From positions 186,001 to 250,000 of IMG/VR virus record IMGVR_UViG_3300050821_013430: a stretch of DNA of 64,000 nucleotides; one strand, 5' to 3'. This document shows, piece after piece, positions 19,704 through 59,700 of the stretch. The stretch's first letter is position 1. Each line of letters starts with the position of its first letter. The translations under genes and the position numbers were made by a program. A model generated the notes under the pieces. That model ran no database searches and was not told the DNA's origin. It saw only the letters and a list, made by a program, of their open reading frames with translations.

Positions 19704-20306
19704 TCATTCTATACCAACTAATAATAAAGGGTGAGCAATATCAGCATATATAATTTCTATTAGAGTTTTTTCATAATTGCCGGGCCCCGTGCTCATATTT
19801 TTTGCAACCTTTTTGATCGGCACCAACTCAATGCCCAAATCACTAATTCCATTCTTACGGAAAAGAGGTATTTTGAATAAACAATCACTTGTCATAAATG
19901 TGTATTTACCAAATTGGACTTCTAATATTATTTTAATTAAATTAGAATTTAATGAAAGTTCTTTATAAAAATCAGCATCAGAATAAGTTCGTTTAAGTTC
20001 GGATTTTTCTTTTTCTTTTGCTGACAATTTACAAAAATCATCAATAGTTTGCCTATCTGCATTTTTGATTTTTGGACATTTGTAATTTGTTGTCCAGCCA
20101 CATTTAATAAGACCATCAGATATTTTTGCATTCATATCTATTGGACTATAAACTACTGTTCCGGTTCTATTAGAATTACCACCAATGGTGTGTGTTCTAC
20201 ACGATTCTAAATCCACATTAGATAAAGTTGAATTAAGTTCTGTAATAATTGGGCCGCTATCACATAGTCCTTGCATATTAAATGCTTCAAATTTACTTAC
20301 TTTCAT
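19704..20306 (-). CDS. BglII/BstYI-family type II restriction endonuclease
   Basis: DADFYK...LEVQFGKYTFM..D...GIELVP...MSTG...YEK pattern; directly downstream of MTase. Confidence 0.75.
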   Translation of the reverse strand: MKVSKFEAFNMQGLCDSGPIITELNSTLSNVDLESCRTHTIGGNSNRTGTVVYSPIDMNAKISDGLIKCGWTTNYKCPKIKNADRQTIDDFCKLSAKEKEKSELKRTYSDADFYKELSLNSNLIKIILEVQFGKYTFMTSDCLFKIPLFRKNGISDLGIELVPIKKVAKNMSTGPGNYEKTLIEIIYADIAHPLLLVGIE

Positions 20307-21363
20307 CTTCTTTTTTGACTTTCTTGGGATCATAAATCGGAGTATTCATTGCGCGGGTTTTTAGTTCACCTTTCTCCAATAATTCAATTCTTTCTAAGGA
20401 AATATCGATATATTTTTTCTCGATATCACATCCATATCCTTTTCTCTTGTTTTTGAGTGCAGCAATCACAGTAGAGCCCGCACCCAGATAAGGATCAAAA
20501 ACAATATCATTTTCATTAGTAAGGGAAAGAACAAATCTTTCTACTAATTCAACAGGAAATTGACAAGGGTGTTCTGTTTTTTCACAATGATTATGTTTCA
20601 CATTTGGAATGTCCCACACATCGCCAGGATTTTTACCAAGCGGATTACCAGATAATTCCCCTTTGCGTAGTCCTTTGTAATATCTTTTGCCAGGATATTT
20701 AGAAGGAACTCTTACCGGATCAAGATTGAAAATATAATTATTAGTGTCTTTAACAAACCATAAAATGGTTTCATGTCTTCCTGAAAATCTATTTTTACAA
20801 TGTAATCCGTGTTCGAAGTGCCAAATGATCCTATTTTTGAGAGTAAAACCAAGTTTTTTGAAAATAGGATATAAAATAATATCCAATGGAATAACTTCTG
20901 CATCTTTTTTAGAAATAGAATTGCCCACTTGCCAACAAATAGACCCCGTGTCTTTTAGTTTTGTTGCACATTTTGTAATAATTTCTTCTTGAATTTTTAC
21001 ATAGGCATCGAGCGAAGAAATTTTTTCATACTCTTTACCAACATTGTATGGTGGGGATGTAATGATTAGCTGAACTGACTTATTTTCTATTTTATCTAAA
21101 AAATCTAAATTACTACCTTGCTCTACTAAATAATCTGTTAGATTTTGTTTTGAGCAAAATTGTCTATTAGTTTCTTGAAACTTACCATCTATTCCACGAA
21201 TGATAATGGGCGCGGCTTTCTGTTCGGCAAGAGCACCGGCAGCAAGTATAGCTTTATTACGAGTACGATAGTATCGATTAGAGTGGGGCGCCCCCCATAT
21301 TGCTCGTTGCCACCCTCGTTGAGTTTTAGAAACACAAACCGCTTGTATCTTTGATATTTTCAT
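20293..21363 (-). CDS. Beta-class N4-C/N6-A DNA methyltransferase with N-terminal DUF2188-like domain
   Basis: LIITSPPYN, HPCQFP, VFDPYLGAGST; N-terminus GW...TRNKAILAAGALA...IIIRGIDGKFQE. Confidence 0.88.
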   Translation of the reverse strand: MKISKIQAVCVSKTQRGWQRAIWGAPHSNRYYRTRNKAILAAGALAEQKAAPIIIRGIDGKFQETNRQFCSKQNLTDYLVEQGSNLDFLDKIENKSVQLIITSPPYNVGKEYEKISSLDAYVKIQEEIITKCATKLKDTGSICWQVGNSISKKDAEVIPLDIILYPIFKKLGFTLKNRIIWHFEHGLHCKNRFSGRHETILWFVKDTNNYIFNLDPVRVPSKYPGKRYYKGLRKGELSGNPLGKNPGDVWDIPNVKHNHCEKTEHPCQFPVELVERFVLSLTNENDIVFDPYLGAGSTVIAALKNKRKGYGCDIEKKYIDISLERIELLEKGELKTRAMNTPIYDPKKVKKEDESK

Positions 21364-21364
21364 C

Positions 21365-21553
21365 TTATTCCTCGTTTGATTTGCCTAATGTCTTATTGCA
21401 CTGGGCCTGTAAAATATTACGAATAAACTCCGCTCTGCTAATGTATTTCCCCGTCTTTTTCAAATACTGAGAAAACGCATCGTCAATTAGTTGCACCAGC
21501 GAGGGCGTCAATTTTAAAAGATACTGCTCGCTCAATTTTTCAATTTTTTTCAT
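21365..21553 (-). CDS. Ribbon-helix-helix-like DNA-binding protein (copy 1)
   Basis: QYLLKLTPSLVQLIDDAF...ISRAEFIRNIL; homologous to 47551..47718. Confidence 0.6.
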   Translation of the reverse strand: MKKIEKLSEQYLLKLTPSLVQLIDDAFSQYLKKTGKYISRAEFIRNILQAQCNKTLGKSNEE

Positions 21554-21572
21554 TAAAACCTGCCGTTTGCAT

Positions 21573-21590
21573 GATATATACTTATATATC
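21573..21590. promoter_or_regulatory. Perfect inverted repeat GATATATA-CT-TATATATC between divergent genes (candidate operator or divergent promoter)
   Basis: Direct reading of the 71-nt intergenic region. Confidence 0.45.
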
Positions 21591-21624
21591 TAAATATATA
21601 CCTATATTTTGAAAGGAAACTAAT

Positions 21625-22674
21625 ATGGAAACTTTTTGTTGCTCGGTTTGTGCTCGCGATATGCCTCAAACATATAGATGTCGTGGAATGTGTTGTGCCT
21701 GTTATACTCGTCTTAGACGACACGGGGTTATCAGCAAGATAGATAAACCAATACTACCAATTTCTTTAACACCTGAACAATCAGCATATATCAACGGAAG
21801 TTTGCTTGGTGATGGACATATTAATTATTATAGCGGCACCGGAAATGCTTCTTTCCGAAAATTACGCTCACAAAAAGACAAATCATATCTTGAATGGGAA
21901 AGACAATTTCTGATTGATTTCTGCACACCATCCTCTAAGGTTTTTGATAGTTCTATATTTGACACGCGAACAAATAAATATTATTACCATTCACGGTTTC
22001 ATACACGATCATGTAGTTTATTTGGAGAATTATATGAAAAATGGTATCCAAACGGTATAAAAATTGTTCCTCGAGATTTGGAATTAACACCATTAACAAT
22101 GGCGATTTGGTTTTTGGATGATGGCGGAATAAGCATTAAGGGAAATAAGCCGCATCTATTTGAAATAAAAATAGCAACTGATGGATTTTTAGAACAAGAT
22201 GTTGAATTTTTGGCACATTTATTACAAGAACGATACAATGAATATTTTGCCGTTTGCAAACACGAAAAACATTTCATAATAAATGCTGCTACTATGGCCT
22301 CGCGTGCCATCATTAAGGATATTGATCCTTATATTCCAAAAGAAATTATGGAACGAAAAACTATAAAATGGAGAAATTCACTTTCTAAAATAAATGAAGA
22401 CATTTTTCTCGGCGGAAACGGCAAATTGAAAGAACAACGATTTTTACAAAATTTTAATGAGAAATTGCAAAATTTATTTAAAAGTAGTAAAAGTTTTACA
22501 ATTTCTGAAATCGGTGAAATGCTGGAATGTTTCAAATCTGTAAATGGACAAATTTGTATAAATAGAGATAAAGTATTAGGATACTTAGAAAAATATCTAC
22601 AAAATAATTTGATTACACAAGAAAAAATTGGTAGAAAATATGTGTATTCCTTTACCAAAGAATTTATGATTTAA
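21625..22674 (+). CDS. LAGLIDADG homing endonuclease (two-motif, I-SceI-like)
   Basis: YINGSLLGDGHI and MAIWFLDDGGI; N-terminal CxxC...CCAC. Confidence 0.8.
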   Translation: METFCCSVCARDMPQTYRCRGMCCACYTRLRRHGVISKIDKPILPISLTPEQSAYINGSLLGDGHINYYSGTGNASFRKLRSQKDKSYLEWERQFLIDFCTPSSKVFDSSIFDTRTNKYYYHSRFHTRSCSLFGELYEKWYPNGIKIVPRDLELTPLTMAIWFLDDGGISIKGNKPHLFEIKIATDGFLEQDVEFLAHLLQERYNEYFAVCKHEKHFIINAATMASRAIIKDIDPYIPKEIMERKTIKWRNSLSKINEDIFLGGNGKLKEQRFLQNFNEKLQNLFKSSKSFTISEIGEMLECFKSVNGQICINRDKVLGYLEKYLQNNLITQEKIGRKYVYSFTKEFMI

Positions 22675-23606
22675 AAATCAGCATCAGGTGATCCAACTCG
22701 AAAAAGTGGAAGTCCGTTCTCATACACCCATCTACAAATCTGCAACCGGTCATCAATCCAAGCGCATACCTTATACTTCCCCCTGATCTGCTCCTCGAAA
22801 ATTCGTTCTTTTATCAGGACATCTTTTTCTTTGTTGCCACTGGGACGCATAAACAATTCGTACTTCACTTCGGGCAAGTGCTTCTGATAGAAGCGTTCCG
22901 TTGGTGCTCGATCTTTTTCTTCTCGTCCCGAGACAAACAAAACCTTATAGCCTAATTTGAAATAGTTCCGCACGCATTCAATCACGTGCGCGTGCGGTAT
23001 GTCCAAATCCGAGGTGCTCGCGTCATACACATTGCGCCCCGGATGAGGCAAACAAATTGTTCCATCATTATCCACGACGATCGCGGCAGGTAAGCCAGTA
23101 TCTTGCTCCAATGGCCTCCATACCTTCGAGCCTAATTTAGGCGCAAAAACCTCTACCTTTGGTTTGTAATGCTTGAACATTTCCTTCCCGCTCGTCTTCC
23201 ACCATTTCTCAATTACCTTGTCATCTAATCTGGCAGTGCCCGTGCGCTTGGAATTGCGTTCTAAGGCTTCTTCCAAAGAGATATAAAAATGCTTTTCGAT
23301 GACCATTGCATCAACATTGCACTTTTTGACGATTTCACAAGTTTGGGAGAAATGCTTGGGCGCCAAATTTAGATTGTCGATGATGATATTTTTACCAGTC
23401 TTCAATCCTTTTTCGATGAGGAAATTTCGTGTTGCCTCAATGATTTTTTCGTATTCGGAAGACCATACCGATCCATTGAAAGTGGCACGAAGGTCATCGT
23501 TGTTCAGGCGTAAGGTGTTTAGAGGGTCTTTGGCCACCTCTTCCTTAGCCCAAGTCGATTTTCCACTTGATGGTATTCCGACCGTTAGAAATATCTTTCT
23601 TTGCAT
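22671..23606 (-). CDS. pseT: Polynucleotide 5'-kinase/3'-phosphatase (T4 PseT-like)
   Basis: GIPSSGKST P-loop, RLNNDDLR, HAD DNDGT, SGRE, IDDRLQI. Confidence 0.88.
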   Translation of the reverse strand: MQRKIFLTVGIPSSGKSTWAKEEVAKDPLNTLRLNNDDLRATFNGSVWSSEYEKIIEATRNFLIEKGLKTGKNIIIDNLNLAPKHFSQTCEIVKKCNVDAMVIEKHFYISLEEALERNSKRTGTARLDDKVIEKWWKTSGKEMFKHYKPKVEVFAPKLGSKVWRPLEQDTGLPAAIVVDNDGTICLPHPGRNVYDASTSDLDIPHAHVIECVRNYFKLGYKVLFVSGREEKDRAPTERFYQKHLPEVKYELFMRPSGNKEKDVLIKERIFEEQIRGKYKVCAWIDDRLQICRWVYENGLPLFRVGSPDADF

Positions 23607-23619
23607 TTTATTCTCTCTT

Positions 23620-24075
23620 TCAATCAGCAGCCCACTTTATCGCTGTCAATAAAAATCCATCCGCATTTTGCAACAATCTAAATTCGTTATAGTTCGCAAA
23701 TTCTCTGGTAAATTTTTCTACCAAGTCTTGTTCTTCTTGTATCGAAAGTTTGGGCACAAGAGGAATTAAAAGCCTACCATTTCTATATGAATAGCATTGA
23801 TTTGCTCGTATTGTTCTAAACCCATAATCTAATCCAACATAAGCGATAGCGTCATTTTCCCTTGCCTTAACCAATGGAATAGCGCCATATGGCAACTGGT
23901 CGGTGATAATTGCCTTTGGAAAGGTCTCTCGTCGTTTTCGTTCTCGATCAAGAAGATCTTGCAAATTGCTTTCTTTGCAACGCAAGCACTTATAGACTTC
24001 TCCATCTGTATGATACCAATCGCACACGATGGTGAGTTTATTATGACCGAAAAGGCGACACCAAAAGTTATTCAT
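23620..24075 (-). CDS. Hypothetical protein
   Basis: Start trimmed to MNNFWC. Confidence 0.5.
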   Translation of the reverse strand: MNNFWCRLFGHNKLTIVCDWYHTDGEVYKCLRCKESNLQDLLDRERKRRETFPKAIITDQLPYGAIPLVKARENDAIAYVGLDYGFRTIRANQCYSYRNGRLLIPLVPKLSIQEEQDLVEKFTREFANYNEFRLLQNADGFLLTAIKWAAD

Positions 24076-24391
24076 TTTCGTGAAATTGGCCACATTGCGC
24101 ACACGGTACCGGCATCCCACCGCTCCAATCGAGAGTAATCGTTGGCTTGCTGGTATAAGTAAGCCAAAGTCTAACTTTTATTCCCTCATCAGTAAAATAT
24201 TTCACCACCTTGTCAATATCTTGCTGCGACAAATTGAAATTCTCAATCCAATTGTAATGATCTACTTTGGTCTTACCATCCGCAGCGACATTCCACATAT
24301 CTTGTTTGAGATGATCGATTGCTTTTCTCGGTCTATCTTCAATGGCCTTTTTAGTTCCTATGCAAATTGTTTCGAGTAGGCTCATTGACAC
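24068..24391 (-). CDS. Hypothetical, 'DWS' family, C-terminal CAQCGQFH tag
   Basis: KYFTDEGI...LDWS...CAQCGQFH. Confidence 0.6.
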   Translation of the reverse strand: MSMSLLETICIGTKKAIEDRPRKAIDHLKQDMWNVAADGKTKVDHYNWIENFNLSQQDIDKVVKYFTDEGIKVRLWLTYTSKPTITLDWSGGMPVPCAQCGQFHENE

Positions 24392-24771
24392 GCCTCATGT
24401 ACCTCATGACATTGTGGGCAAGTATCTGGATAGGTATTGTTTGATTGCTTCATTTTGTCTGACCAATCAAAATAGACTAAAACATCATTATCCCATTCAG
24501 GATCGAAATCGTTCCAATCATCATCTTCATCATAATTGCAAGAAAGATCATTCACGAAAAATCCCTCATTCTCAAAATATTTCTTGATCTTTTTTCGATC
24601 TTTTTTGGAAAGTTTCTGCCACTTCTTCATTTCACGAAAATTATAGTGAGTTTTTCCTTTGATAGCCTTTTTCTTTATTCCATCAACAATCTTTTGTACT
24701 ATCAATGTATAATGACTATCTTTATTGTCTGCTGACAATTTACAAACCTCATCAATTAAATTCATTGGCAA
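24382..24771 (-). CDS. Hypothetical, 'DWS' family, C-terminal CPQCHEVH tag
   Basis: KYFENEGF...FDWS...CPQCHEVHEAC. Confidence 0.6.
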   Translation of the reverse strand: MPMNLIDEVCKLSADNKDSHYTLIVQKIVDGIKKKAIKGKTHYNFREMKKWQKLSKKDRKKIKKYFENEGFFVNDLSCNYDEDDDWNDFDPEWDNDVLVYFDWSDKMKQSNNTYPDTCPQCHEVHEACQ

Positions 24772-25061
24772 ACCTCATGCATCTCGCCACATTGGGAACA
24801 CGGCTTCTTTATATGCTTCGACCAATCTACTCTAATTGTATGAATGCCGGTCTGTTTGACCTCAAAACCCTTTTCAATTAATTCTTTGATGATTTTATCC
24901 ATTAGATGGGGTGAAAAACAATCGTAAAAAGTAAAAACCGTGCTTTCATTTCCGACTAAGGCCTTATTTTTGATATGGATATAGAGATTATCCATATCTG
25001 ATTGTATTTTTAATTTATTAGCCGCTTCTACTTCCTTTGCCATTTCTTCTGCTAAATTCAT
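24762..25061 (-). CDS. Hypothetical, 'DWS' family, C-terminal CSQCGEMH tag
   Basis: EKGFEV...VDWS...CSQCGEMHEVC. Confidence 0.6.
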   Translation of the reverse strand: MNLAEEMAKEVEAANKLKIQSDMDNLYIHIKNKALVGNESTVFTFYDCFSPHLMDKIIKELIEKGFEVKQTGIHTIRVDWSKHIKKPCSQCGEMHEVCQ

Positions 25062-45432: not shown

Positions 45433-46368
45433 ATGAATAAATATGTTTGCAACGAGAAAATTTTCACCACAGAAAATGCTTTGTCATTTTATTTGCTGGG
45501 TGTATTTTTGACTGATGGCTGGATCGAAAAATCCAAGCCAAATTTAGTAGGATTTTGTTCAACAGATTTCGAATGGATCAGAGATATCAAAAATATTATA
45601 TCTTTGGATTTACCATTGCATACTAAGAAAACGAAATATAAAAATTTATACCATTTTGAGATGAATAATAAAATTATACGAAAATGGTTTGACAAATATG
45701 GATTTACTACAAATAAATCATTAGATATACAATTTCCAAAAATACCAAATGAATATATCATAAGTTTTATTAGAGGGTGTTGGGATGGCGACGGATTTAT
45801 ATCACATACATCTCGACACAAAACGGGTGGGCGTCATAATAAAGATATTTTATATCACGATATAAGTTGCGGAATTTCATCGGGAAGTAAAAATTTTATT
45901 GACGAAATGGGTGCCAACATAACAAGAATATTTGACATCGATGTCAATATAACCAATAAATTTTCAGAAAAACCTGATGCATTATATATCGTGGGTAGAA
46001 AATGTATTGATATACACGAGCATTTTATGCTGCGAATAAATGGAACTAAATGTTATAAATTTGTTAAAATGCTATATGACGGGGCTGAAATATTTCTTGA
46101 AAGAAAGAAAATAATAGCGGATGATGTTATCAACTATTATAATACAAATAACATTATACCACACGATAAAATTATGTGGCCAAAAATTGATTTACTCGTA
46201 GCAATGGTAAATAATAAAGGTTATAGGGCAGTTGGTCGAGAACTAAATACAACAGACTGCACAGTCAAAAATCATATAAGAAGTAATAATAAATTACATC
46301 TTGTAAAATCACCTTTCGTATCATTTGGTAGTAAAAATACGCAAGACAATATTAGTCAGCAGAAATAG
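45433..46368 (+). CDS. LAGLIDADG (DOD-type) homing endonuclease
   Basis: YLLGVFLTDGWI and FIRGCWDGDGFI; AT-rich. Confidence 0.8.
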   Translation: MNKYVCNEKIFTTENALSFYLLGVFLTDGWIEKSKPNLVGFCSTDFEWIRDIKNIISLDLPLHTKKTKYKNLYHFEMNNKIIRKWFDKYGFTTNKSLDIQFPKIPNEYIISFIRGCWDGDGFISHTSRHKTGGRHNKDILYHDISCGISSGSKNFIDEMGANITRIFDIDVNITNKFSEKPDALYIVGRKCIDIHEHFMLRINGTKCYKFVKMLYDGAEIFLERKKIIADDVINYYNTNNIIPHDKIMWPKIDLLVAMVNNKGYRAVGRELNTTDCTVKNHIRSNNKLHLVKSPFVSFGSKNTQDNISQQK

Positions 46369-47071
46369 CGCACCTTGTTCCTGCCTCATATTGACGAAAC
46401 CGATTTGGATGAGCAAAATTTGAGAAGGTGCAATATTCGGGCCCACCATATCGCTGGTGCCAAAATCCACCCTTCGTTGCATAACCCCATTGACGGTTGG
46501 GTGCTTTTACTATCTCAGTCGTATTACCAAGCATATCGAACAAACCATACTCATTAGTGCATAATGGATGCGATCCTGATGGCGATCCCTTGAACAAACT
46601 CTTTGCATAGGGACGCCAAGTATTTGGAAACCATAACTTCCACCAATCTACCTTGATATAATTGATAGCGTCATCTCGACACCATCCAAGATGGTAGGTG
46701 TTGCCGTAGAAGAATTGATGATGCGCTGGCCCAAGACACGCAGTTTCCCATTCTTCTTCGGTCGCTAATCGTTTATGCTGAGATGCGCAGTATTGTTCGG
46801 CATCAGAAAAAGTTAGTGCGTAGTAAGGAAGATGCAGGTACAAATTTGGTGCTTCATAAACATCGAGGCAAAAATCGTGATCCTTATCCTCGATTTTTAC
46901 CATCCCTGCTGGGCATTTGGATGGAATATGGATATCGATCTGTTTATCGGCCAGAAACTCAACCGGATGGTCTTCAATAGCATTCAACTGAACAGCGCTT
47001 AGTTTTGGTTGATCGTGTCTAAGCAGACTACCAAGCCATACGGCAGCCATAACATACGAAAGTCTCACCAT
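46352..47071 (-). CDS. FGE-sulfatase (SUMF1) domain protein, probably exported; start uncertain
   Basis: CPAGMV, FCLDVYE, KRLATEEEWETAC, YGLFDMLGN..E, GGFW. Confidence 0.75.
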   Translation of the reverse strand: MVRLSYVMAAVWLGSLLRHDQPKLSAVQLNAIEDHPVEFLADKQIDIHIPSKCPAGMVKIEDKDHDFCLDVYEAPNLYLHLPYYALTFSDAEQYCASQHKRLATEEEWETACLGPAHHQFFYGNTYHLGWCRDDAINYIKVDWWKLWFPNTWRPYAKSLFKGSPSGSHPLCTNEYGLFDMLGNTTEIVKAPNRQWGYATKGGFWHQRYGGPEYCTFSNFAHPNRFRQYEAGTRCAISAD

Positions 47072-47237
47072 CCATTTGATTAGGGCCGTTCGCAAAAGGG
47101 TAATATTCATTGCATTGCCTGCAAATCTCGCCCTCATAGTCTTTGCTCCGCTTACTTCTCGGAATATCCTCATCTATATAGTCTTCCAGCGTTTGATCGA
47201 GATCACCAGAAAAATCGAGGTTTAGGTTATCTGCCAT
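47028..47237 (-). CDS. Small zinc-finger protein
   Basis: CRQC...CYGC. Confidence 0.5.
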   Translation of the reverse strand: MADNLNLDFSGDLDQTLEDYIDEDIPRSKRSKDYEGEICRQCNEYYPFANGPNQMDGETFVCYGCRMAW

Positions 47238-47266
47238 GCGCTTTTCCCTTTCGAGGAGATGTCAAA

Positions 47267-47539
47267 CTATTCGTCTAATAGGGTAAGGTCTTCTTTCAGA
47301 ACCCAACAAGTGGCATTGTTTTGAGTGTCTTTGACCTCCATTACCGCAATGCTATGATTGTCGTATCTTTCTCTCTGTAAAAACTGCGGCCCGCTAACGA
47401 TCATTAGTTGATCATACCCACTATCGAGTTCCACATCCCAGTCAATGCCTACATTCGCTAATGTAGAACTGAACTTGAAAGTTGGGCCACCCGTTTTGGT
47501 GAAACGAGCCCTTTTTCCAAGATAATCGTGCATTGTCAT
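47267..47539 (-). CDS. Hypothetical protein
   Basis: AAGGAG SD before MTMHDY. Confidence 0.5.
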   Translation of the reverse strand: MTMHDYLGKRARFTKTGGPTFKFSSTLANVGIDWDVELDSGYDQLMIVSGPQFLQRERYDNHSIAVMEVKDTQNNATCWVLKEDLTLLDE

Positions 47540-47550
47540 TCTATCTCTCC

Positions 47551-47718
47551 TTATTTGGTTTTCTTCGAACAAGCCTCTTGCAAGAGCCTGCGAACAAACT
47601 CCGATTTCGCGATGTATTCGCCCGTCTTTTTCAGATGCTTCGAGAATGCCTCGTCGATCATCTCATCCAACTCGGGCGAGAGTCGGATCAGGTATTGTTT
47701 CGTGAGATTTTGTTTCAT
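47551..47718 (-). CDS. Ribbon-helix-helix-like DNA-binding protein (copy 2; 55 aa, not in ORF track)
   Basis: Manual translation MKQNLTKQYLIRLSPELDEMIDEAFSKHLKKTGEYIAKSEFVRRLLQEACSKKTK; aligns without gaps to 21365..21553. Confidence 0.7.
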   Translation of the reverse strand: MKQNLTKQYLIRLSPELDEMIDEAFSKHLKKTGEYIAKSEFVRRLLQEACSKKTK

Positions 47719-47782
47719 TTTACACCGTATATTTGTATGTGGCGATATGCATAGTGTGGTATATATTTATTAGGAGAACGAA

Positions 47783-49132
47783 ATGCCAGCAAAGAAAACA
47801 ACAGAACAGTTCGTCCAAGATGCTCGTTGTGTGCATGGCGACACCTACGATTACTCTATGGTCATTTATATCAACAGCGCTACAAAAGTGCAGATTGGCT
47901 GCATCCAACACGGGATTTTCTTGCAAACGCCCAACGATCATTTAGGCGGACATGGCTGCAATAAATGTGCCAAAATAATAACTGCTAACAAGAAAAGAAG
48001 AACAAATGATAGTTTTATTGTTATGGCAAACGAAACTCATGGCAATAAATATGATTATTCACTTGTGGAATATTGTGATAGTCTTACAAAAGTAAGTATT
48101 AAATGCTCTAAACACGGAGTATTTAGTCAGACCCCAGCGAGACATCTTTCTGGTCAAGGGTGTCCTAAATGTGGCAGAGAAAAAGCAAATGATAGCATGC
48201 GCAAGGAACTATCTGATTTTATCAACGAAGCGATAAGCATACATGGCACTACATATGATTATTCATTAGTTGAATATATTACAACACATAAACCAGTGAA
48301 TATAATATGCAAAATTCACGGAAATTTCCAACAGACGCCACACGGTCATTTAGAAGGCCGTGGGTGCCCAAATTGTGGCTATGAATGCGTATCACAAAAA
48401 CTTTTATCTAATACAGGTGCCTTTATACAGAAGGCACAAGAAAAATATGGAAATCTATATGATTATAGTTTTGTTGAATATATCAGTAGTCATATACCGG
48501 TGTTAATTGTATGCCAAAAACACGGACTTTTTAGTCAAAAACCAATAACACATTTACAATATGGTTGTGTGCAATGTGGTTATGATACGACCAGTGAAAA
48601 ACTCTCATATACACTTAAAGAATTTGTGGCGAAGGCAGATATTATACATCATGATAAATATGACTATTCCAAATCAATATATGTGGGGTCTCGATCCGAG
48701 ATTTGCATTAAATGCCCGCAACATGGAGAATTTTGGCAGAAACCCGTAACTCATCTCAGGGGTTCTGGGTGTCCCAAATGTGGGAAATCTATTTCCAATG
48801 TAGAAACCATGTGGCTTGATACCGTTGGTGTCCCAAATGACAAAAATCATAGACAAGTATTGATTAGGATTACCGATGCACAATCTAAAAAGAAGCGTAT
48901 TATAGTTGATGGATTTATGCCGGAAACCAATACGATTTACGAATTTTTAGGAGATTTCTGGCACGGAAATCCATCAGTTTTTGATCTAAATACTATCAAT
49001 GCTGCCACTCATACAACTTTTGGAGAGTTATATGAAAATACTATTGAACGAGAGCGACTAATCAAACAAGCAGGGTATAATGTTGTCAGTATTTGGGAAA
49101 ATGAATGGCATAGAATAAAAAATGCTATGTGA
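47783..49132 (+). CDS. Putative homing endonuclease with 5 DUF723-like repeats and PD-(D/E)XK-like domain
   Basis: Five CxxHGxFxQxPxxH...CxxC repeats; IVDGF...YEFLGDFWHGNP. Confidence 0.72.
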   Translation: MPAKKTTEQFVQDARCVHGDTYDYSMVIYINSATKVQIGCIQHGIFLQTPNDHLGGHGCNKCAKIITANKKRRTNDSFIVMANETHGNKYDYSLVEYCDSLTKVSIKCSKHGVFSQTPARHLSGQGCPKCGREKANDSMRKELSDFINEAISIHGTTYDYSLVEYITTHKPVNIICKIHGNFQQTPHGHLEGRGCPNCGYECVSQKLLSNTGAFIQKAQEKYGNLYDYSFVEYISSHIPVLIVCQKHGLFSQKPITHLQYGCVQCGYDTTSEKLSYTLKEFVAKADIIHHDKYDYSKSIYVGSRSEICIKCPQHGEFWQKPVTHLRGSGCPKCGKSISNVETMWLDTVGVPNDKNHRQVLIRITDAQSKKKRIIVDGFMPETNTIYEFLGDFWHGNPSVFDLNTINAATHTTFGELYENTIERERLIKQAGYNVVSIWENEWHRIKNAM

Positions 49133-51014
49133 GCATTTCCAAAAAATCTAACTCTCCAATACATTGAACGCCAAGTTTTTTCGCTTTTTCACTTTTGGTG
49201 CTTGTCGAGTCGGATTGTGCTTGAACTAAATAAGTTAGACCCCGAGACACACTTTTGATTTCACCACCATTATTTTTGACCATTTCTTCAAGTTCTGCAC
49301 GCTGATGTTCCATTTTTCCAGTAAAACAAAAACTTTTACCATCAAATTTCCCGCCAATCACTTTTTCTTTCTTTTCCATTATCTTTACTCCATTTTTCAA
49401 CAATTTATCGATCACACTTTGATATTTTTTAAGTCCGTCAAATAAACTTTGTGATCTTGACTCGCCCATCCCTTTTACTTGCATCATTTTCTCAACAGAT
49501 AGAGACATCAGTTTATCTATATTATCATAGCCAGCACTTATCAAAAGACGAATACTGCTTGATCCTATTAAATTTATTGACAGTCCGCCTACAAATACAT
49601 CAAGAGGGATAGGATTTACTTTCCATAACTCCTGATGAACTTTGGTAGCGGATTTCTTTCCCATACGATCTAATGATTGTAAATCGTCAATAGTTAAGGT
49701 ATATAAGTCTGAAACATTTTCTACCAAATTTTCAGAGACTAATCTCTCAATTAATTTCTGACCCACTTCCAAGATGTTGAGTTCCTTGACCCAATTCTTG
49801 ATGCGACCAATGACTTGCTCGGGACACTTGTCGGTATTACGGCAAACCAAGTATTCCCCATCCATTACCAGTGAATGATCACAGGAAGGGCATTTCTTGG
49901 GGGCCTTGGCAACAATGGTAGCCTTCTTGACCACCTTTTCAACTCTCGGGATAATTTCTCCTGCCTTGCAGACCAAGACTTCTGCGCCTTCTCCCAATCC
50001 CAAACTTTCGATGTAGGAAAGGTTATAGACGGAAGCCTTCTCGATTTCAGAGCCGAGAAGTTTGGTCTTCTCAAACCAGCATCTTGGGTTTATTCTCCCC
50101 ATACTCCCAGTCTCCCAGGTGATGGCTTTGACGATGGCTTTGGCAAACTGATTGGCAAACTTGAACGCCATCTTGCCTTTGGGCCTGAGATTAGTTTCAC
50201 CAAGAGAGTGTTGGAACATAAGATCGTCGCAGGCCACTACTAATCCATCAATTTCGTAGTTGAGGCTATCGCGTGTCTTATCCTGGTAGTCTTGCCACAT
50301 TTGATTGACTTCTTTGGTAGTGGTATAAGACTTCCAATTAGGAGTAATGAAGCCATTCCCCTCCAAGAAGTCAAACTTCTCGTGTTCATAAACCCATTCT
50401 GGGTTATCTGTCAGGATGTCATACATCATCAGAGTAAGATGTTGGCAGCCCTCCCCATCCAAACGACGACACAAGCCGGATGCCGCGTTCCTGGGATTGC
50501 TATAAGTTGGAAAGTACTTTTGATGGTCATCTTTCAGGAGGACGATTTCACCGCGAATGACACCAGAGAAATCTTCCCAATAAGCATCCAGTTTCTTGAC
50601 TGCACCTTTCATTTTGCGAACATTGACGAGAATGTTTTCCCCAGTTTCTCCCCCGCCTCTAAGAATTGCCTTGACCAGTTTGCCATCCTCATATTGACAA
50701 CCGATGCTAAGTCCATCTAATTTCTCGGAGACCACAACGGGCTTGCCTTCGAGATCCTCGGTAATCCAGACGGTCATCTCCTCGGGCGTATTGACTTTGT
50801 TGAGAGAGCCCAGGGGGAAGAGATGCTTCTCCTTCTTCCACTCGGTGGTAGATGGCTCTGCACCGACCTCGGCAAGGATCGGATTGGTAGGATCTAAGAC
50901 GCCTAACTCGGCGATGAGCGCGTCAAACTCATCATCATCGATGATGGACTGACCATTGTAGTAAGCCTCTCGGGCTTTGTTGATGGTCTTCTCTAACTCT
51001 TGAACATTGGGCAT
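49125..51014 (-). CDS. ligA: NAD-dependent DNA ligase
   Basis: AYY.G..II.D.EFD, SL.KV, SEKLDG (KxDG), RGE, NPRNAASG, IDGLV, AFKF, HhH repeats, C-terminal BRCT (FCFTG). Confidence 0.95.
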   Translation of the reverse strand: MPNVQELEKTINKAREAYYNGQSIIDDDEFDALIAELGVLDPTNPILAEVGAEPSTTEWKKEKHLFPLGSLNKVNTPEEMTVWITEDLEGKPVVVSEKLDGLSIGCQYEDGKLVKAILRGGGETGENILVNVRKMKGAVKKLDAYWEDFSGVIRGEIVLLKDDHQKYFPTYSNPRNAASGLCRRLDGEGCQHLTLMMYDILTDNPEWVYEHEKFDFLEGNGFITPNWKSYTTTKEVNQMWQDYQDKTRDSLNYEIDGLVVACDDLMFQHSLGETNLRPKGKMAFKFANQFAKAIVKAITWETGSMGRINPRCWFEKTKLLGSEIEKASVYNLSYIESLGLGEGAEVLVCKAGEIIPRVEKVVKKATIVAKAPKKCPSCDHSLVMDGEYLVCRNTDKCPEQVIGRIKNWVKELNILEVGQKLIERLVSENLVENVSDLYTLTIDDLQSLDRMGKKSATKVHQELWKVNPIPLDVFVGGLSINLIGSSSIRLLISAGYDNIDKLMSLSVEKMMQVKGMGESRSQSLFDGLKKYQSVIDKLLKNGVKIMEKKEKVIGGKFDGKSFCFTGKMEHQRAELEEMVKNNGGEIKSVSRGLTYLVQAQSDSTSTKSEKAKKLGVQCIGELDFLEMLT

Positions 51015-58701: not shown

Positions 58702-59700
58702 ATGACGAAAATCAATGTATCGCCCGAAAAACTCGCTGATATGGTGCGTCAAACTTCGATCGCTGAGGTGGCGAAAGAATTGAATTGTAGTGGTAATCTT
58801 ATTAGGACGGTTTTGCATCGAAACGGGTTCAGTAATCTGGTAATGAGGATGAATAAGCACATCCAATGGCCAACAAATGAAGCGCTTGTCGAATGGATCA
58901 ATAATGGATCACTAACATCCGTTGCCAAGCAACTAAATTGTTCAATAACGGCAGTCCATAGAAAGGTAAAAGTAGAGGGCTTATCTAACCTTATTGACAA
59001 GTACTCCAATTTCGTGGCTTACAACAAACAAGTGCTCTTGGATGAAGGGGCAGAGGCCTTTTACCTTTTGGGCGCCTTTATGACTGATGGGTGCATACGA
59101 AATACGCATTGTTATGCGAGCATAACATCAAAAGATGGTGATTGGATCGAGATCATCAAGAATACTCTTTGCCCCAATGCAAATATCGTCAAAACCGGCA
59201 ATGCTAACATACTCAGAATATGCTGCCTAAGAATTGTAGAGTGGTTTATTGACCATCAATGTACGCCCAAAAAGTCGCTAACCCTACAATTTCCCAATGT
59301 ACCGGACGAATACCTACCAGACTTTATTCGCGGATGCATCGATGGTGATGGAAGCATATCTAAAACTCACTCTTTTAGTAGGCGCAATAATCGATATTAT
59401 GATGCCGTATCTTGTTATCTTTGCGGCAGTTCCTTAGCGTTTATGCAAACACTTTGCGCTATACTTGAAAAACAAGGCATTGAGCATAGCCTACTCACTA
59501 TTGAGAACAATACATCAGTATTAGATGGTAGGGTTATAGAACAACAACACCCACACTATCGGGTGGGTTTCAAGCAGCGCACATTGGACAAATTCCTCGA
59601 ATGGATTTACTATCCGGGACATACATTGTCAATGCCAAGAAAGAAAGCATTGGCTGAATACGCTATCGCTTTTAGAAAGACCGTGCGGCCACATATTTGA
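58702..59700 (+). CDS. LAGLIDADG (DOD-type) homing endonuclease with N-terminal HTH repeats
   Basis: FYLLGAFMTDGCI and FIRGCIDGDGSI; two 'VAKxLNCS' HTH-like units. Confidence 0.8.
   Translation: MTKINVSPEKLADMVRQTSIAEVAKELNCSGNLIRTVLHRNGFSNLVMRMNKHIQWPTNEALVEWINNGSLTSVAKQLNCSITAVHRKVKVEGLSNLIDKYSNFVAYNKQVLLDEGAEAFYLLGAFMTDGCIRNTHCYASITSKDGDWIEIIKNTLCPNANIVKTGNANILRICCLRIVEWFIDHQCTPKKSLTLQFPNVPDEYLPDFIRGCIDGDGSISKTHSFSRRNNRYYDAVSCYLCGSSLAFMQTLCAILEKQGIEHSLLTIENNTSVLDGRVIEQQHPHYRVGFKQRTLDKFLEWIYYPGHTLSMPRKKALAEYAIAFRKTVRPHI

What the first reader, a model, noticed from the sequence alone, without database searches (positions are those of the whole stretch)
21365..22674. Repeated cassette: small RHH-like regulator divergent from an antisense homing endonuclease (also 47551-49132)
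Seen: two homologous ~55-60 aa minus-strand genes (QYLLKLTPSLVQLIDDAFSQYLKKTGKYISRAEFIR versus QYLIRLSPELDEMIDEAFSKHLKKTGEYIAKSEFVR) each sit head-to-head, 64-71 nt apart, with a plus-strand endonuclease. The partners belong to unrelated families (LAGLIDADG and DUF723-repeat PD-(D/E)XK). The first spacer has a perfect palindrome GATATATA-CT-TATATATC. The second RHH gene is missing from the ORF track. Inference: a dedicated repressor module for free-standing nucleases that can be paired with different nuclease families. Alternative: copy 1 controls the R-M operon directly downstream of it.
Basis: partly seen in the sequence, partly recalled or inferred. Interest (0 to 1): 0.68.

Follow-up and report, generated by a model that had tools for sequence, protein, structure and literature searches.

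The report
Phage repressor gene paired with nucleases
Two copies of a small, previously unnamed DNA-binding repressor gene in a giant soil phage each sit head-to-head with a selfish DNA-cutting gene. Related phages show the same repressor beside five unrelated nuclease families, so it looks like a portable on/off switch for dangerous nuclease cassettes, although binding has not been shown.

Summary
RHH1 (21365-21553, minus strand) and RHH2 (47551-47718, minus strand) are 54% identical paralogues and the only two copies in a 472,749-bp jumbo-phage record. Each lies 71 or 64 nt head-to-head with a plus-strand homing endonuclease gene (HEG): one LAGLIDADG_2, one a DUF723/DUF4379 zinc-finger nuclease.

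- **Fold.** The predicted fold and homodimer are ribbon-helix-helix (RHH). No Pfam or PHROG model reaches threshold. The family has 36 clusters, all from metagenomes.
- **Context.** Of 15 family contexts, 10 have an antisense HEG directly upstream, drawn from five nuclease families. Sister RHHs carry different HEGs. Five contexts have no HEG but mostly keep the same upstream boxes at fixed distances from the RHH start.
- **Downstream genes.** The RHH always heads a co-directional operon, often a methyltransferase or restriction-modification (R-M) pair.
- **Reverse check.** None of 110 loci holding homologues of three of these HEGs carries this RHH, and 17 of 19 HEG-like genes in this genome lack it.

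Best reading: an Arc/omega-like autorepressor with its compact control region forms a portable module. It gates its own cassette and probably the abutting HEG. It is not a repressor dedicated to nucleases. This is a new variant of a known kind. DNA binding and repression are inferred, not shown.

The parts
21365..21553 (-). RHH1, 62 aa, first gene of the RHH1-methyltransferase-endonuclease operon
   Evidence: ORF. AF2 pLDDT 89.9. RHH-dominated structural matches. Dimer model 0.56 against 0.00 for the best control. Family of 36 clusters.
21554..21624 (.). 71-nt shared control region between RHH1 and the LAGLIDADG HEG
   Evidence: Sequence. Homologous along its length to the spacer of the close relative L013, although the HEG there is HNH_3.
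21597..21606 (-). Distal box TATAGGTATA, starting 53 nt upstream of the RHH1 ATG and 20 nt from the HEG ATG
   Evidence: A distal box lies 49 to 54 nt upstream of the RHH ATG in 10 of 14 family spacers.
21573..21590 (.). Perfect palindrome GATATATA-CT-TATATATC. On the minus strand it contains the proximal box TATATC, 25 nt upstream of the ATG.
21591..21602 (-). 12-mer GGTATATATTTA shared with spacer 2
   Evidence: Three occurrences in 472,749 bp, two of them in the two spacers. The third lies inside a coding region.
21625..22674 (+). Antisense LAGLIDADG_2 homing endonuclease, 349 aa. Its 3' end overlaps the PNKP stop by 4 nt.
   Evidence: Pfam 108 bits; PHROG 11023. Only copy in the genome. 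Absent from the close relative L013.
20293..21363 (-). N4/N6 DNA methyltransferase, starting 1 nt after the RHH1 stop
   Evidence: PF01555 at 199 bits; NCBIfam adenine methyltransferase E 2e-45. Junction read.
19704..20333 (-). BglII-like type II restriction endonuclease, overlapping the methyltransferase by 41 nt
   Evidence: PF09195 at 30.2 bits (cut-off 26); PHROG 28079 E 3e-18.
22671..23606 (-). Polynucleotide kinase-phosphatase, convergent with the HEG. It carries a recombination breakpoint near nt 460.
   Evidence: Pfam. Against L013, nt 1-460 are about 95% identical and the rest about 50%.
47551..47718 (-). RHH2, 55 aa, first gene of a minus-strand cassette
   Evidence: Weak RHH_1, NikR and ParD similarity.
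47719..47782 (.). 64-nt shared control region between RHH2 and the DUF723 nuclease
47746..47753 (.). Palindromic box TATGCATA, the only occurrence in the genome
47758..47769 (+). 12-mer GGTATATATTTA shared with spacer 1, here pointing toward the HEG
47783..49132 (+). Antisense DUF723/DUF4379 zinc-finger-repeat endonuclease, 449 aa. Its 3' end overlaps the ligase stop by 8 nt.
46352..47539 (-). Cassette downstream of RHH2: a 90-aa ORF (47267-47539), a 69-aa zinc-ribbon ORF (47028-47237) and an FGE-sulfatase-like 273-aa ORF (46352-47173)
   Evidence: An SD-like GGAGAG lies in the 11-nt gap after the RHH2 stop.
49125..51014 (-). NAD-dependent DNA ligase, convergent with the HEG. In a relative the same ligase | HEG | RHH site holds an HNH_5 HEG.
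45433..46368 (+). Second antisense HEG (LAGLIDADG_3), bracketing the far end of the RHH2 cassette. It has no RHH neighbour.

Best explanation
RHH1 and RHH2 belong to an unnamed RHH family known only from uncultivated phages.

**Proposed mechanism.**
- Each protein is a dimeric Arc/omega/CopG-type DNA-binding protein, encoded as the first gene of a short operon on the main coding strand.
- I infer that it binds family-specific boxes in the 61-72-nt region directly upstream. These are a distal TATGCATA/TATAGGYATA-type box about 52 nt upstream of the ATG, YATAWC units, and a proximal TATAWC about 30 nt upstream.
- I infer that this binding shuts off its own promoter after an initial burst.
- The start codon and ribosome site of the antisense homing endonuclease lie only 9-20 nt beyond the distal box. 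Any promoter for the endonuclease must therefore overlap the same boxes, so the bound repressor would gate the nuclease as well.

**What is constant and what varies.** The RHH gene plus its control region is the constant, portable part. The flanking genes are interchangeable. Upstream is a homing endonuclease from any of five families. Downstream is an R-M pair, a methyltransferase, PNKP, a phosphoesterase or other genes.

**Shown:** paralogy, RHH fold and dimer models, gene order, recurrence of the pairing, conserved box geometry, and HEG turnover beside orthologous RHHs.

**Inferred:** DNA binding, repression, and control of the HEG side.
For: **Fold.** AF2 model, RHH-dominated structural matches and homodimer model. 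The near-invariant Q-x-L-x-K/R in the predicted strand across the family predicts a shared operator.

**Control region.**
- YATAWC occurs 18 times in 12 spacers, against 4.0 +/- 1.9 in dinucleotide-preserving shuffles (0 of 2000 shuffles reach 18).
- Six of 12 spacers have at least two copies, against 0 of 160 other upstream regions in this genome.
- The distal box lies 49 to 54 nt upstream of the RHH ATG in 10 of 14 spacers, and the proximal box 25 to 31 nt upstream in 10 of 14. This holds whether the upstream neighbour is a HEG or a co-directional gene.
- The boxes are unique to the two spacers in 472,749 bp.

**Pairing.**
- Ten of 15 family contexts have an antisense HEG directly upstream, from five nuclease families. 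The baseline in this genome is about 1.5%.
- Spacers with a HEG measure 61-72 nt in eight cases, plus one of 91 and one of 161.
- Sister RHHs carry different HEGs at the same site: P0042 has HNH_3 and P0043 has GIY-YIG. At the ligase site the HEG is DUF723 here and HNH_5 in a relative.
- The HEG-RHH pair lies on either side of the same conserved gene in relatives, for both PNKP and DUF7227.

**Operon.** RHH1's stop lies 1 nt before the methyltransferase start.

**Precedent.** The Arc RHH represses the divergent tnpB | tnpA-arc promoter of IS605, and Arc genes were noted beside homing endonucleases (bioRxiv 10.64898/2026.09.24.754181).
Against: - There are no binding or expression data. The only sequencing run holding this DNA is the source metagenome, and no RNA run holds it.
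- The boxes sit where -35 and -10 elements of the RHH promoter would sit, so they may be promoter elements rather than operators. The sigma-70 consensus scan was not above shuffles.
- The repeats have no uniform periodicity.
- RHH2's spacer departs from the common geometry.
- HEGs clearly do not need this RHH. 17 of 19 HEG-like genes here lack it, and so do all 110 homologue loci.
- The 15 contexts are phylogenetically related. Only about 7 HEG junction types are independent.
- The family tree rests on ~58 aligned residues and is weakly supported at most nodes.
Confidence: 0.55

Rival explanations
1. The RHH regulates only its own downstream operon. For RHH1 that would make it a C-protein-like controller of the R-M pair. 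The HEG has no regulatory link to it. HEGs accumulate there because the promoter-bearing gap at the head of an autonomous accessory cassette is one of the few places an antisense insert is tolerated. Alternatively, RHH-led cassettes spread by co-conversion alongside whichever HEG is adjacent.
For: - Five of 15 members lack a HEG, and most of these keep the boxes.
- Methyltransferase or R-M genes recur downstream.
- The upstream gap is about 62-72 nt whatever the neighbour.
- The region is hypervariable between phages whose flanking proteins are 97-98% identical, with a sharp breakpoint inside PNKP next to the HEG.
- The association is one-way.
Against: - The HEG start lies 9-20 nt from the distal box, so the HEG has no room for an independent promoter within the spacer.
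- Both RHH-headed units in this genome carry a HEG, although about 160 other gaps of at least 60 nt exist.
- The head-to-head orientation is constant across five nuclease families.
Confidence: 0.3
2. The RHH gene or its AT-rich palindromic control region is itself the homing target, or a recombination hot spot that different HEGs invade repeatedly. RHH copies without a HEG would then be empty sites.
For: - HEGs of different families occupy exactly the same position next to orthologous RHHs.
- HEG-free members exist.
- The spacer is conserved right up to the HEG start between RHH1 and L013, although the HEGs differ.
Against: - Five unrelated nuclease families would all have to converge on one small, rare family.
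- The convergent neighbours are conserved enzymes (ligase, PNKP, DUF7227), which are the usual kind of HEG target.
- The mosaic breakpoint lies in PNKP, not in the RHH.
Confidence: 0.08
3. The RHH acts as an antitoxin-like protein inhibitor that binds and neutralises the neighbouring nuclease.
For: Many RHH proteins are type II antitoxins. Structural neighbours include ParD, TacA, VapB and MazE.
Against: - The protein ends within about 10 residues of helix B, so it has no toxin-binding tail.
- The partners come from five unrelated folds.
- The nuclease is transcribed divergently rather than downstream in the same operon.
Confidence: 0.03

Closest known systems
Arc of phage P22 (immI region: Pant-arc-ant, with divergent Pmnt)
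   Same: A small RHH dimer encoded as the first gene of the operon it shuts off after a burst. Its operator lies inside a compact divergent promoter region, so a single bound repressor affects both directions. (Own knowledge of the P22 system.)
   Different: No sequence membership: the Pfam scan at E <= 1 gave no Arc-family hit. The flanking genes here are nucleases or R-M genes, not an antirepressor. Binding is untested.
Arc RHH of IS605-family transposons (Moon et al., bioRxiv 10.64898/2026.09.24.754181)
   Same: An RHH repressor inside a selfish element. It sits divergent from a nuclease gene (tnpB) and binds the intergenic bidirectional promoter. The authors note Arc genes next to homing endonucleases.
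   Different: A different RHH family in a different host element: here a lytic jumbo phage rather than an insertion sequence. The partners are protein-only HEGs from five families plus R-M cassettes. The function here is inferred, not measured.
Controller (C) proteins of type II R-M systems, such as C.PvuII and C.BglII (reviewed in PMC3874152)
   Same: A small DNA-binding protein encoded upstream of, and co-oriented with, R-M genes. It is presumed to time nuclease expression. The endonuclease in the RHH1 operon is BglII-like.
   Different: C proteins are helix-turn-helix activator-repressors that bind C-boxes (own knowledge). This protein has an RHH fold. The gene order here is regulator, methyltransferase, endonuclease. 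The same regulator family also heads operons that are not R-M.
Omega repressor of pSM19035 (omega-epsilon-zeta)
   Same: An RHH that binds cooperatively to repeats in its own promoter, with affinity depending on their number and orientation. It acts strictly as a repressor (PMC3874152). It is a structural neighbour.
   Different: The repeats here are short YATAWC-type units without uniform phasing. The setting is a plasmid toxin-antitoxin and partition system rather than a phage nuclease cassette.
I-TevI autorepression in phage T4
   Same: Expression of a phage homing endonuclease held down by a DNA-binding protein acting at its own promoter. (Own knowledge.)
   Different: In T4 the endonuclease is its own repressor. 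Here a separate RHH gene would do the job.

Membership tests
Ribbon-helix-helix (MetJ/Arc/CopG) superfamily | N-terminal strand followed by two helices | tested here: met
   AF2 model pLDDT 89.9: extended residues 1-16, helix 17-34, helix 40-56. Nearly all of the top ~40 VIA-align matches are RHH proteins, Z 4.0-6.4, rmsd 1.5-3 A over 42-51 residues. Foldseek alone gave no significant hit.
Ribbon-helix-helix (MetJ/Arc/CopG) superfamily | Obligate homodimer with an antiparallel two-stranded ribbon | tested here: met
   Homodimer model ipSAE 0.56 against 0.00 for the best of 3 controls. Runs agree in at least 91% of contacts; partner pLDDT at least 74. Contacts 12:12, 12:11 and 11:13 indicate a symmetric strand pair. 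The mark was reached by 21 of 30 solved homodimers and 0 of 23 solved single chains. This is a model, not a measurement.
Ribbon-helix-helix (MetJ/Arc/CopG) superfamily | Sequence match to a curated RHH model above threshold | tested here: not met
   PF01402 RHH_1 scores 14.2 bits against a cut-off of 20.5, for RHH2 only. RHH1 has no hit. NikR and ParD NCBIfam hits are far below cut-off. The PDB profile search gives E 0.6. PHROGs gives nothing.
Ribbon-helix-helix (MetJ/Arc/CopG) superfamily | Sequence-specific binding to repeated operator sites | not testable with these tools
   Candidate boxes are enriched and positionally fixed. There are no binding data.
R-M controller (C) proteins | Helix-turn-helix (Xre-like) fold | tested here: not met
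   The fold is RHH.
R-M controller (C) proteins | Encoded directly upstream of, and co-oriented with, the R-M genes | tested here: met
   Met for RHH1: its stop lies 1 nt before the methyltransferase start, and the endonuclease overlaps the methyltransferase. Not met for RHH2.
Type II antitoxins of RHH type | C-terminal toxin-binding extension, with the toxin gene next in the same operon | tested here: not met
   The proteins are 55-62 aa and end soon after helix B. The nuclease is transcribed divergently.
IS605-type Arc (Pfam Arc family) | Sequence membership | tested here: not met
   The Pfam scan at E <= 1 gave no Arc-family hit.
IS605-type Arc (Pfam Arc family) | Divergent from a selfish nuclease across a short bidirectional control region | tested here: met
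   Spacers are 71 and 64 nt here, and 61-91 nt in most relatives.
Free-standing homing endonuclease genes | Nuclease domain of a HEG family, intact | tested here: met
   LAGLIDADG_2 at 108 bits with both motifs. The DUF723/DUF4379 protein matches PHROG 559/681 endonucleases.
Free-standing homing endonuclease genes | Presence/absence polymorphism between close relatives, with mosaic flanks | tested here: met
   The L013 phage has flanking proteins 97-98% identical but lacks the LAGLIDADG gene. PNKP identity drops from about 95% to about 50% near nt 460. The ligase site holds HNH_5 in a relative.
Free-standing homing endonuclease genes | Site-specific cleavage of HEG-less alleles | not testable with these tools
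   Needs an enzyme assay.

The most novel reading that the evidence does not exclude
In this clade of soil and peat jumbo phages, the unit of selfish mobility is a two-part cassette. Its constant component is the RHH repressor with its ~65-nt bidirectional control region. Nuclease ORFs of any family (LAGLIDADG, GIY-YIG, HNH, Vsr-like) are swapped in on one side, and R-M or repair cargo on the other. One tiny repressor would then coordinately throttle a homing endonuclease and a restriction system, and cargo cassettes would ride on HEG-driven gene conversion.
Probability: 0.35. Interest if true: 0.72.

Novelty: new variant of a known kind. Interest (0 to 1): 0.55.

Why it matters
Free-standing homing endonucleases are toxic if over-expressed. 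How phages keep them in check is known for only a few cases, such as I-TevI autorepression.

A small, portable RHH switch found beside five nuclease families, and often heading R-M operons, would be a general plug-in solution for taming DNA-cutting selfish genes. It would parallel the recently reported Arc repressor of IS605 and extend that idea to lytic jumbo phages and protein-only HEGs.

It would also supply three useful things:
- a non-HTH analogue of R-M controller proteins;
- a compact bidirectional repressor-operator part of about 250 bp in total, usable in synthetic biology;
- a natural system, using the close relatives with swapped HEGs and the mid-PNKP breakpoint, for studying how HEG-driven gene conversion shuffles accessory cassettes.

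If the RHH only autoregulates its own operon, the finding reduces to an ordinary new RHH family with an interesting insertion-site bias.

Tried and rejected
- **Family scans.** PHROGs gave no hit for either RHH. The Pfam 'Caulimovir_coat_dom' hits (23 bits against a cut-off of 27) were treated as spurious low-complexity helix similarity.
- **Word-based protein search.** With RHH1 alone it found only RHH1 itself.
- **Cultured collections.** GenBank phages gave no match by megablast or tblastn. The GTDB genome scan gave no relative.
- **Locus scans with the full alignment.** The family alignment A2 was too divergent for the search for related loci. Subsets found only the same phage plus a few short contigs.
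- **Distant relatives.** Phages with ligase 45-48% identical, or PNKP 31-60% identical, have neither RHH nor HEG at those loci. They are too divergent to count as empty sites.
- **Repeat periodicity.** Autocorrelation showed no uniform period. There is a (TA)n signal in some spacers and a 9-nt signal in others.
- **K-mer enrichment.** A 7-mer search with mononucleotide shuffles gave only modest enrichment. The degenerate YATAWC test with dinucleotide shuffles was clearer.
- **Promoter scan.** The sigma-70 consensus scan was not above shuffles.
- **Phage RNA polymerase.** No multisubunit RNA polymerase domains were detected. This is not proof of absence.
- **Nuclease fold of the 449-aa protein.** The PDB sequence search of its C-terminus gave nothing. 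The single-sequence AF2 model had pLDDT 43 and is unusable. The PD-(D/E)XK label therefore stays weak.
- **P0004's neighbour.** Its divergent 568-aa neighbour has no nuclease signature and was counted as non-HEG.
- **HEG N-termini.** The different HEGs share no N-terminal module, so a fixed N-terminal adaptor is rejected.
- **Antitoxin reading.** Rejected on protein length and partner diversity.
- **Read data.** Only the source DNA run holds the locus and there is no RNA.
- **Restrictions.** No alternative genetic code was needed.
Full report
**Setting.** The window is bases 186001-250000 of a 472,749-bp IMG/VR virus record, a jumbo phage from a soil metagenome. About 600 of 727 ORFs lie on the minus strand. 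Plus-strand genes occur mostly as isolated antisense singletons.

**Observation check.**
- RHH1 (21365-21553, minus strand, 62 aa) and RHH2 (47551-47718, minus strand, 55 aa) are real ORFs. They are 54% identical over 48 residues, E 4e-22. They are the only two copies in the genome.
- The spacers to the plus-strand genes are 71 nt and 64 nt. The palindrome is at 21573-21590.
- The first partner is a LAGLIDADG_2 enzyme at 108 bits with both catalytic motifs present. The second is a DUF723/DUF4379 zinc-finger-repeat protein that matches PHROG endonuclease families at E 4e-67 and 7e-63.
- The 'PD-(D/E)XK' label for the second enzyme rests on sub-threshold RAP and MTES_1575 hits. I could not improve it.
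- The head-to-head geometry alone says little. Any antisense insert in a minus-strand array is head-to-head with some gene.

**Is it an RHH?**
- No curated model reaches threshold.
- An exhaustive profile search found a small family of 36 clusters at 50% identity. Their common pattern is a K-Q-x-L-L-K-x-S-P strand segment, a helix, a T-G-x-Y-I-T/S-K/R-S-E-F-I-R turn, and a second helix.
- With that alignment, AF2 gives pLDDT 89.9 and two helices after an extended N-terminus.
- Foldseek found nothing significant. An all-against-representatives structural search returned a list made almost entirely of RHH proteins: TraM N-domain, NikR, PutA, AmrZ, TacA, SvtR, omega, Arc and ParG. Z was 4-6.4 and rmsd 1.5-3 A.
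- A homodimer model scored 0.56 against 0.00 for the best of three controls. It showed symmetric 12:12 strand contacts. The runs agreed in at least 91% of contacts, and partner pLDDT was at least 74. The mark is reached by 21 of 30 solved homodimers and 0 of 23 solved single chains.
- I accept the RHH fold. Family membership by sequence model is not met.

**Surroundings.**
- RHH1's stop is 1 nt from the start of an N4/N6 methyltransferase. That gene overlaps a BglII-like endonuclease.
- RHH2 is followed after 11 nt by a 90-aa ORF, then a 69-aa zinc-ribbon ORF and an FGE-sulfatase-like gene.
- The HEGs' 3' ends overlap the stops of conserved enzymes: PNKP for the first and NAD-ligase for the second.
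- The RHH2 cassette is bracketed at its far end by another antisense HEG, 45433-46368.

**HEG census.** The genome has 19 ORFs with HEG-type domains, 9 of them antisense. Only two abut an RHH. The divergent neighbours of the other seven are unrelated small proteins.

**Relatives of the RHH.** Fifteen contexts could be read. Ten have an antisense nuclease directly upstream:

| Family member | Upstream antisense nuclease |
|---|---|
| RHH1 | LAGLIDADG_2 |
| RHH2 | DUF723 |
| P0002, P0003, P0042 | HNH_3 |
| P0044 | HNH/HNH_5 |
| P0011, L010, P0043 | GIY-YIG (NUMOD3-containing in P0011 and L010) |
| P0038 | SegE-like GIY-YIG |

- Five contexts have no HEG: P0041, P0008, P0009, P0006, and P0004, whose divergent 568-aa neighbour has no nuclease signature.
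- Allowing for relatedness, there are about seven independent HEG junction types among about twelve distinct contexts. The baseline in this genome is about 1.5%.
- The tree of the RHH domain is short and weakly supported except at a few nodes. It puts different HEG families beside sister RHHs: P0042/HNH_3 with P0043/GIY-YIG (support 0.98), and RHH1/LAGLIDADG with P0002/HNH_3.
- At the ligase site a relative has HNH_5 where this phage has DUF723.
- The HEG-RHH pair lies upstream of PNKP in L013 but downstream of it here. Likewise it lies on either side of DUF7227 in other contigs.

**Downstream of the RHH.** Methyltransferase or R-M-like genes of unrelated types follow in at least five contexts: RHH1, P0003, P0004, P0011 and P0043. 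Elsewhere the next gene is PNKP, a metallophosphoesterase, DUF7227 or an unknown gene.

**The reverse test.** I fetched 110 IMG/VR loci holding homologues of the DUF723, GIY-YIG and HNH_3 nucleases. None carries this RHH family. Only 17 of 92 have any divergent upstream neighbour. The association is therefore one-way: this RHH usually has a HEG, but HEGs usually have no such RHH.

**Control region.**
- The two spacers share the 12-mer GGTATATATTTA. It occurs three times in the genome, and the third occurrence is inside a gene.
- Across the family, YATAWC occurs 18 times in 12 spacers, against 4.0 +/- 1.9 in dinucleotide shuffles (0 of 2000). At least two copies occur in 6 of 12 spacers, against 0 of 160 other upstream regions.
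- A distal box (TATGCATA, TATAGGYATA or a near variant) starts 49 to 54 nt upstream of the RHH ATG in 10 of 14 spacers. A proximal TATAWC starts 25 to 31 nt upstream in 10 of 14. This holds with or without a HEG.
- In this genome TATGCATA occurs once, in spacer 2. The composite distal-plus-proximal pattern occurs once, in spacer 1. The RHHs therefore have no visible regulon beyond their own spacers.
- The HEG start codon lies 9-20 nt beyond the distal box, with its Shine-Dalgarno sequence abutting the box.
- I cannot separate operator from promoter. The boxes sit roughly where -35 and -10 elements would sit, the consensus scan is uninformative, and the repeats have no single period.

**Evidence that the HEGs are mobile here.** The L013 phage shares flanking proteins at 97-98% identity but differs completely between them. 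Its PNKP is about 95% identical to ours over the first ~460 nt and about 50% identical thereafter. The divergent half abuts our LAGLIDADG gene. This is the mosaic expected from HEG-associated gene conversion, though other recombination could produce it too.

**Interpretation.** The constant element is the RHH plus its ~65-nt control region, at the head of an autonomous cassette. The genes on both sides change. The most economical mechanism is an Arc/omega-type autorepressor whose binding sites fill a compact divergent control region. It would limit its own operon and, by geometry, the abutting HEG.
- RHH fold and dimer: confidence about 0.9.
- Autoregulation through the boxes: about 0.65.
- Control of the HEG side: about 0.5.
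- The combined statement: 0.55.

The main rival (0.3) keeps the autoregulation but denies any link to the HEG. It explains the adjacency by insertion tolerance at unit boundaries, or by cassettes hitch-hiking on HEG co-conversion. The homing-target reading (0.08) and the antitoxin reading (0.03) are less likely, for the reasons given under rival explanations.

**Comparison with known systems.** Functionally this resembles three things:
- P22 Arc (own knowledge);
- the omega repressor (PMC3874152);
- most closely, the Arc RHH recently shown to repress the divergent tnpB | tnpA-arc promoter of IS605. Those authors also noted Arc genes beside homing endonucleases (bioRxiv 10.64898/2026.09.24.754181).

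It is not a sequence member of those families. It is not a C protein, because the fold test fails. It is not an antitoxin.

I rate it a new variant of a known kind: a new RHH family from phages only, recurrently paired head-to-head with five HEG families and often heading R-M operons.

Noticed in passing
whole genome (G000), including the window: Strong avoidance of 6-bp palindromes. GCCGGC occurs 0 times against 74.7 expected, CTCGAG 7 against 91, and GAATTC 23 against 123 (order-4 Markov expectation). This suggests long exposure to type II restriction. AGATCT, the BglII site, is also low at 62 against 134.
   Followed up: partly
window 22671-23606 versus L013:4200-5135: PNKP is a mosaic. The kinase half is about 95% identical to the close relative, and the phosphatase half about 50%. 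The switch falls near nt 460, next to the LAGLIDADG gene.
   Followed up: yes
window 24068-25061 (-): Three tandem paralogous small genes (about 99-129 aa) all end in a C-x-Q-C-G-x-x-H-E-x-C-Q motif. This looks like a lineage-specific zinc-ribbon family of unknown role.
   Followed up: no
window 45433-46368 (+) and 58702-59700 (+): Two more antisense LAGLIDADG_3 homing endonuclease genes, the second with an N-terminal HTH. Neither has an RHH neighbour. The first brackets the far end of the RHH2 cassette.
   Followed up: partly
L064:2578-2940 (IMGVR_UViG_3300050821_002957, 405,631 bp): A 120-aa generic CopG-like RHH lies co-directionally about 60 nt upstream of a GIY-YIG HEG in another jumbo-phage contig. 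It gives only a weak hit to the family profile, E 0.0017.
   Followed up: partly
family members P0006, P0012, P0017, P0042, P0043; P0013, P0015, P0021, P0024, P0029, P0032, P0035: Some members add a conserved ~45-aa C-terminal helical extension. Others add large C-terminal domains, reaching 190-335 aa in total. These may be sensor or partner-binding domains fused to the same RHH head.
   Followed up: no
L013:7291-8198: The closely related phage carries a TnpB-like gene (OrfB_IS605, Cas12f1-like_TNB) a few genes downstream of its HEG-RHH-PNKP unit. This is another selfish nuclease in the same hypervariable region.
   Followed up: no
window 20293-21363 (-): The methyltransferase carries an N-terminal DUF2188 segment at 23.3 bits (cut-off 22), ahead of the N6_N4_Mtase domain.
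   Followed up: no
window 22671-23606 and 49125-51014: The phage encodes both a T4-type polynucleotide kinase-phosphatase and an NAD-dependent ligase. That is a nucleic-acid repair pair, and each gene has an antisense HEG lodged at its 3' end.
   Followed up: no
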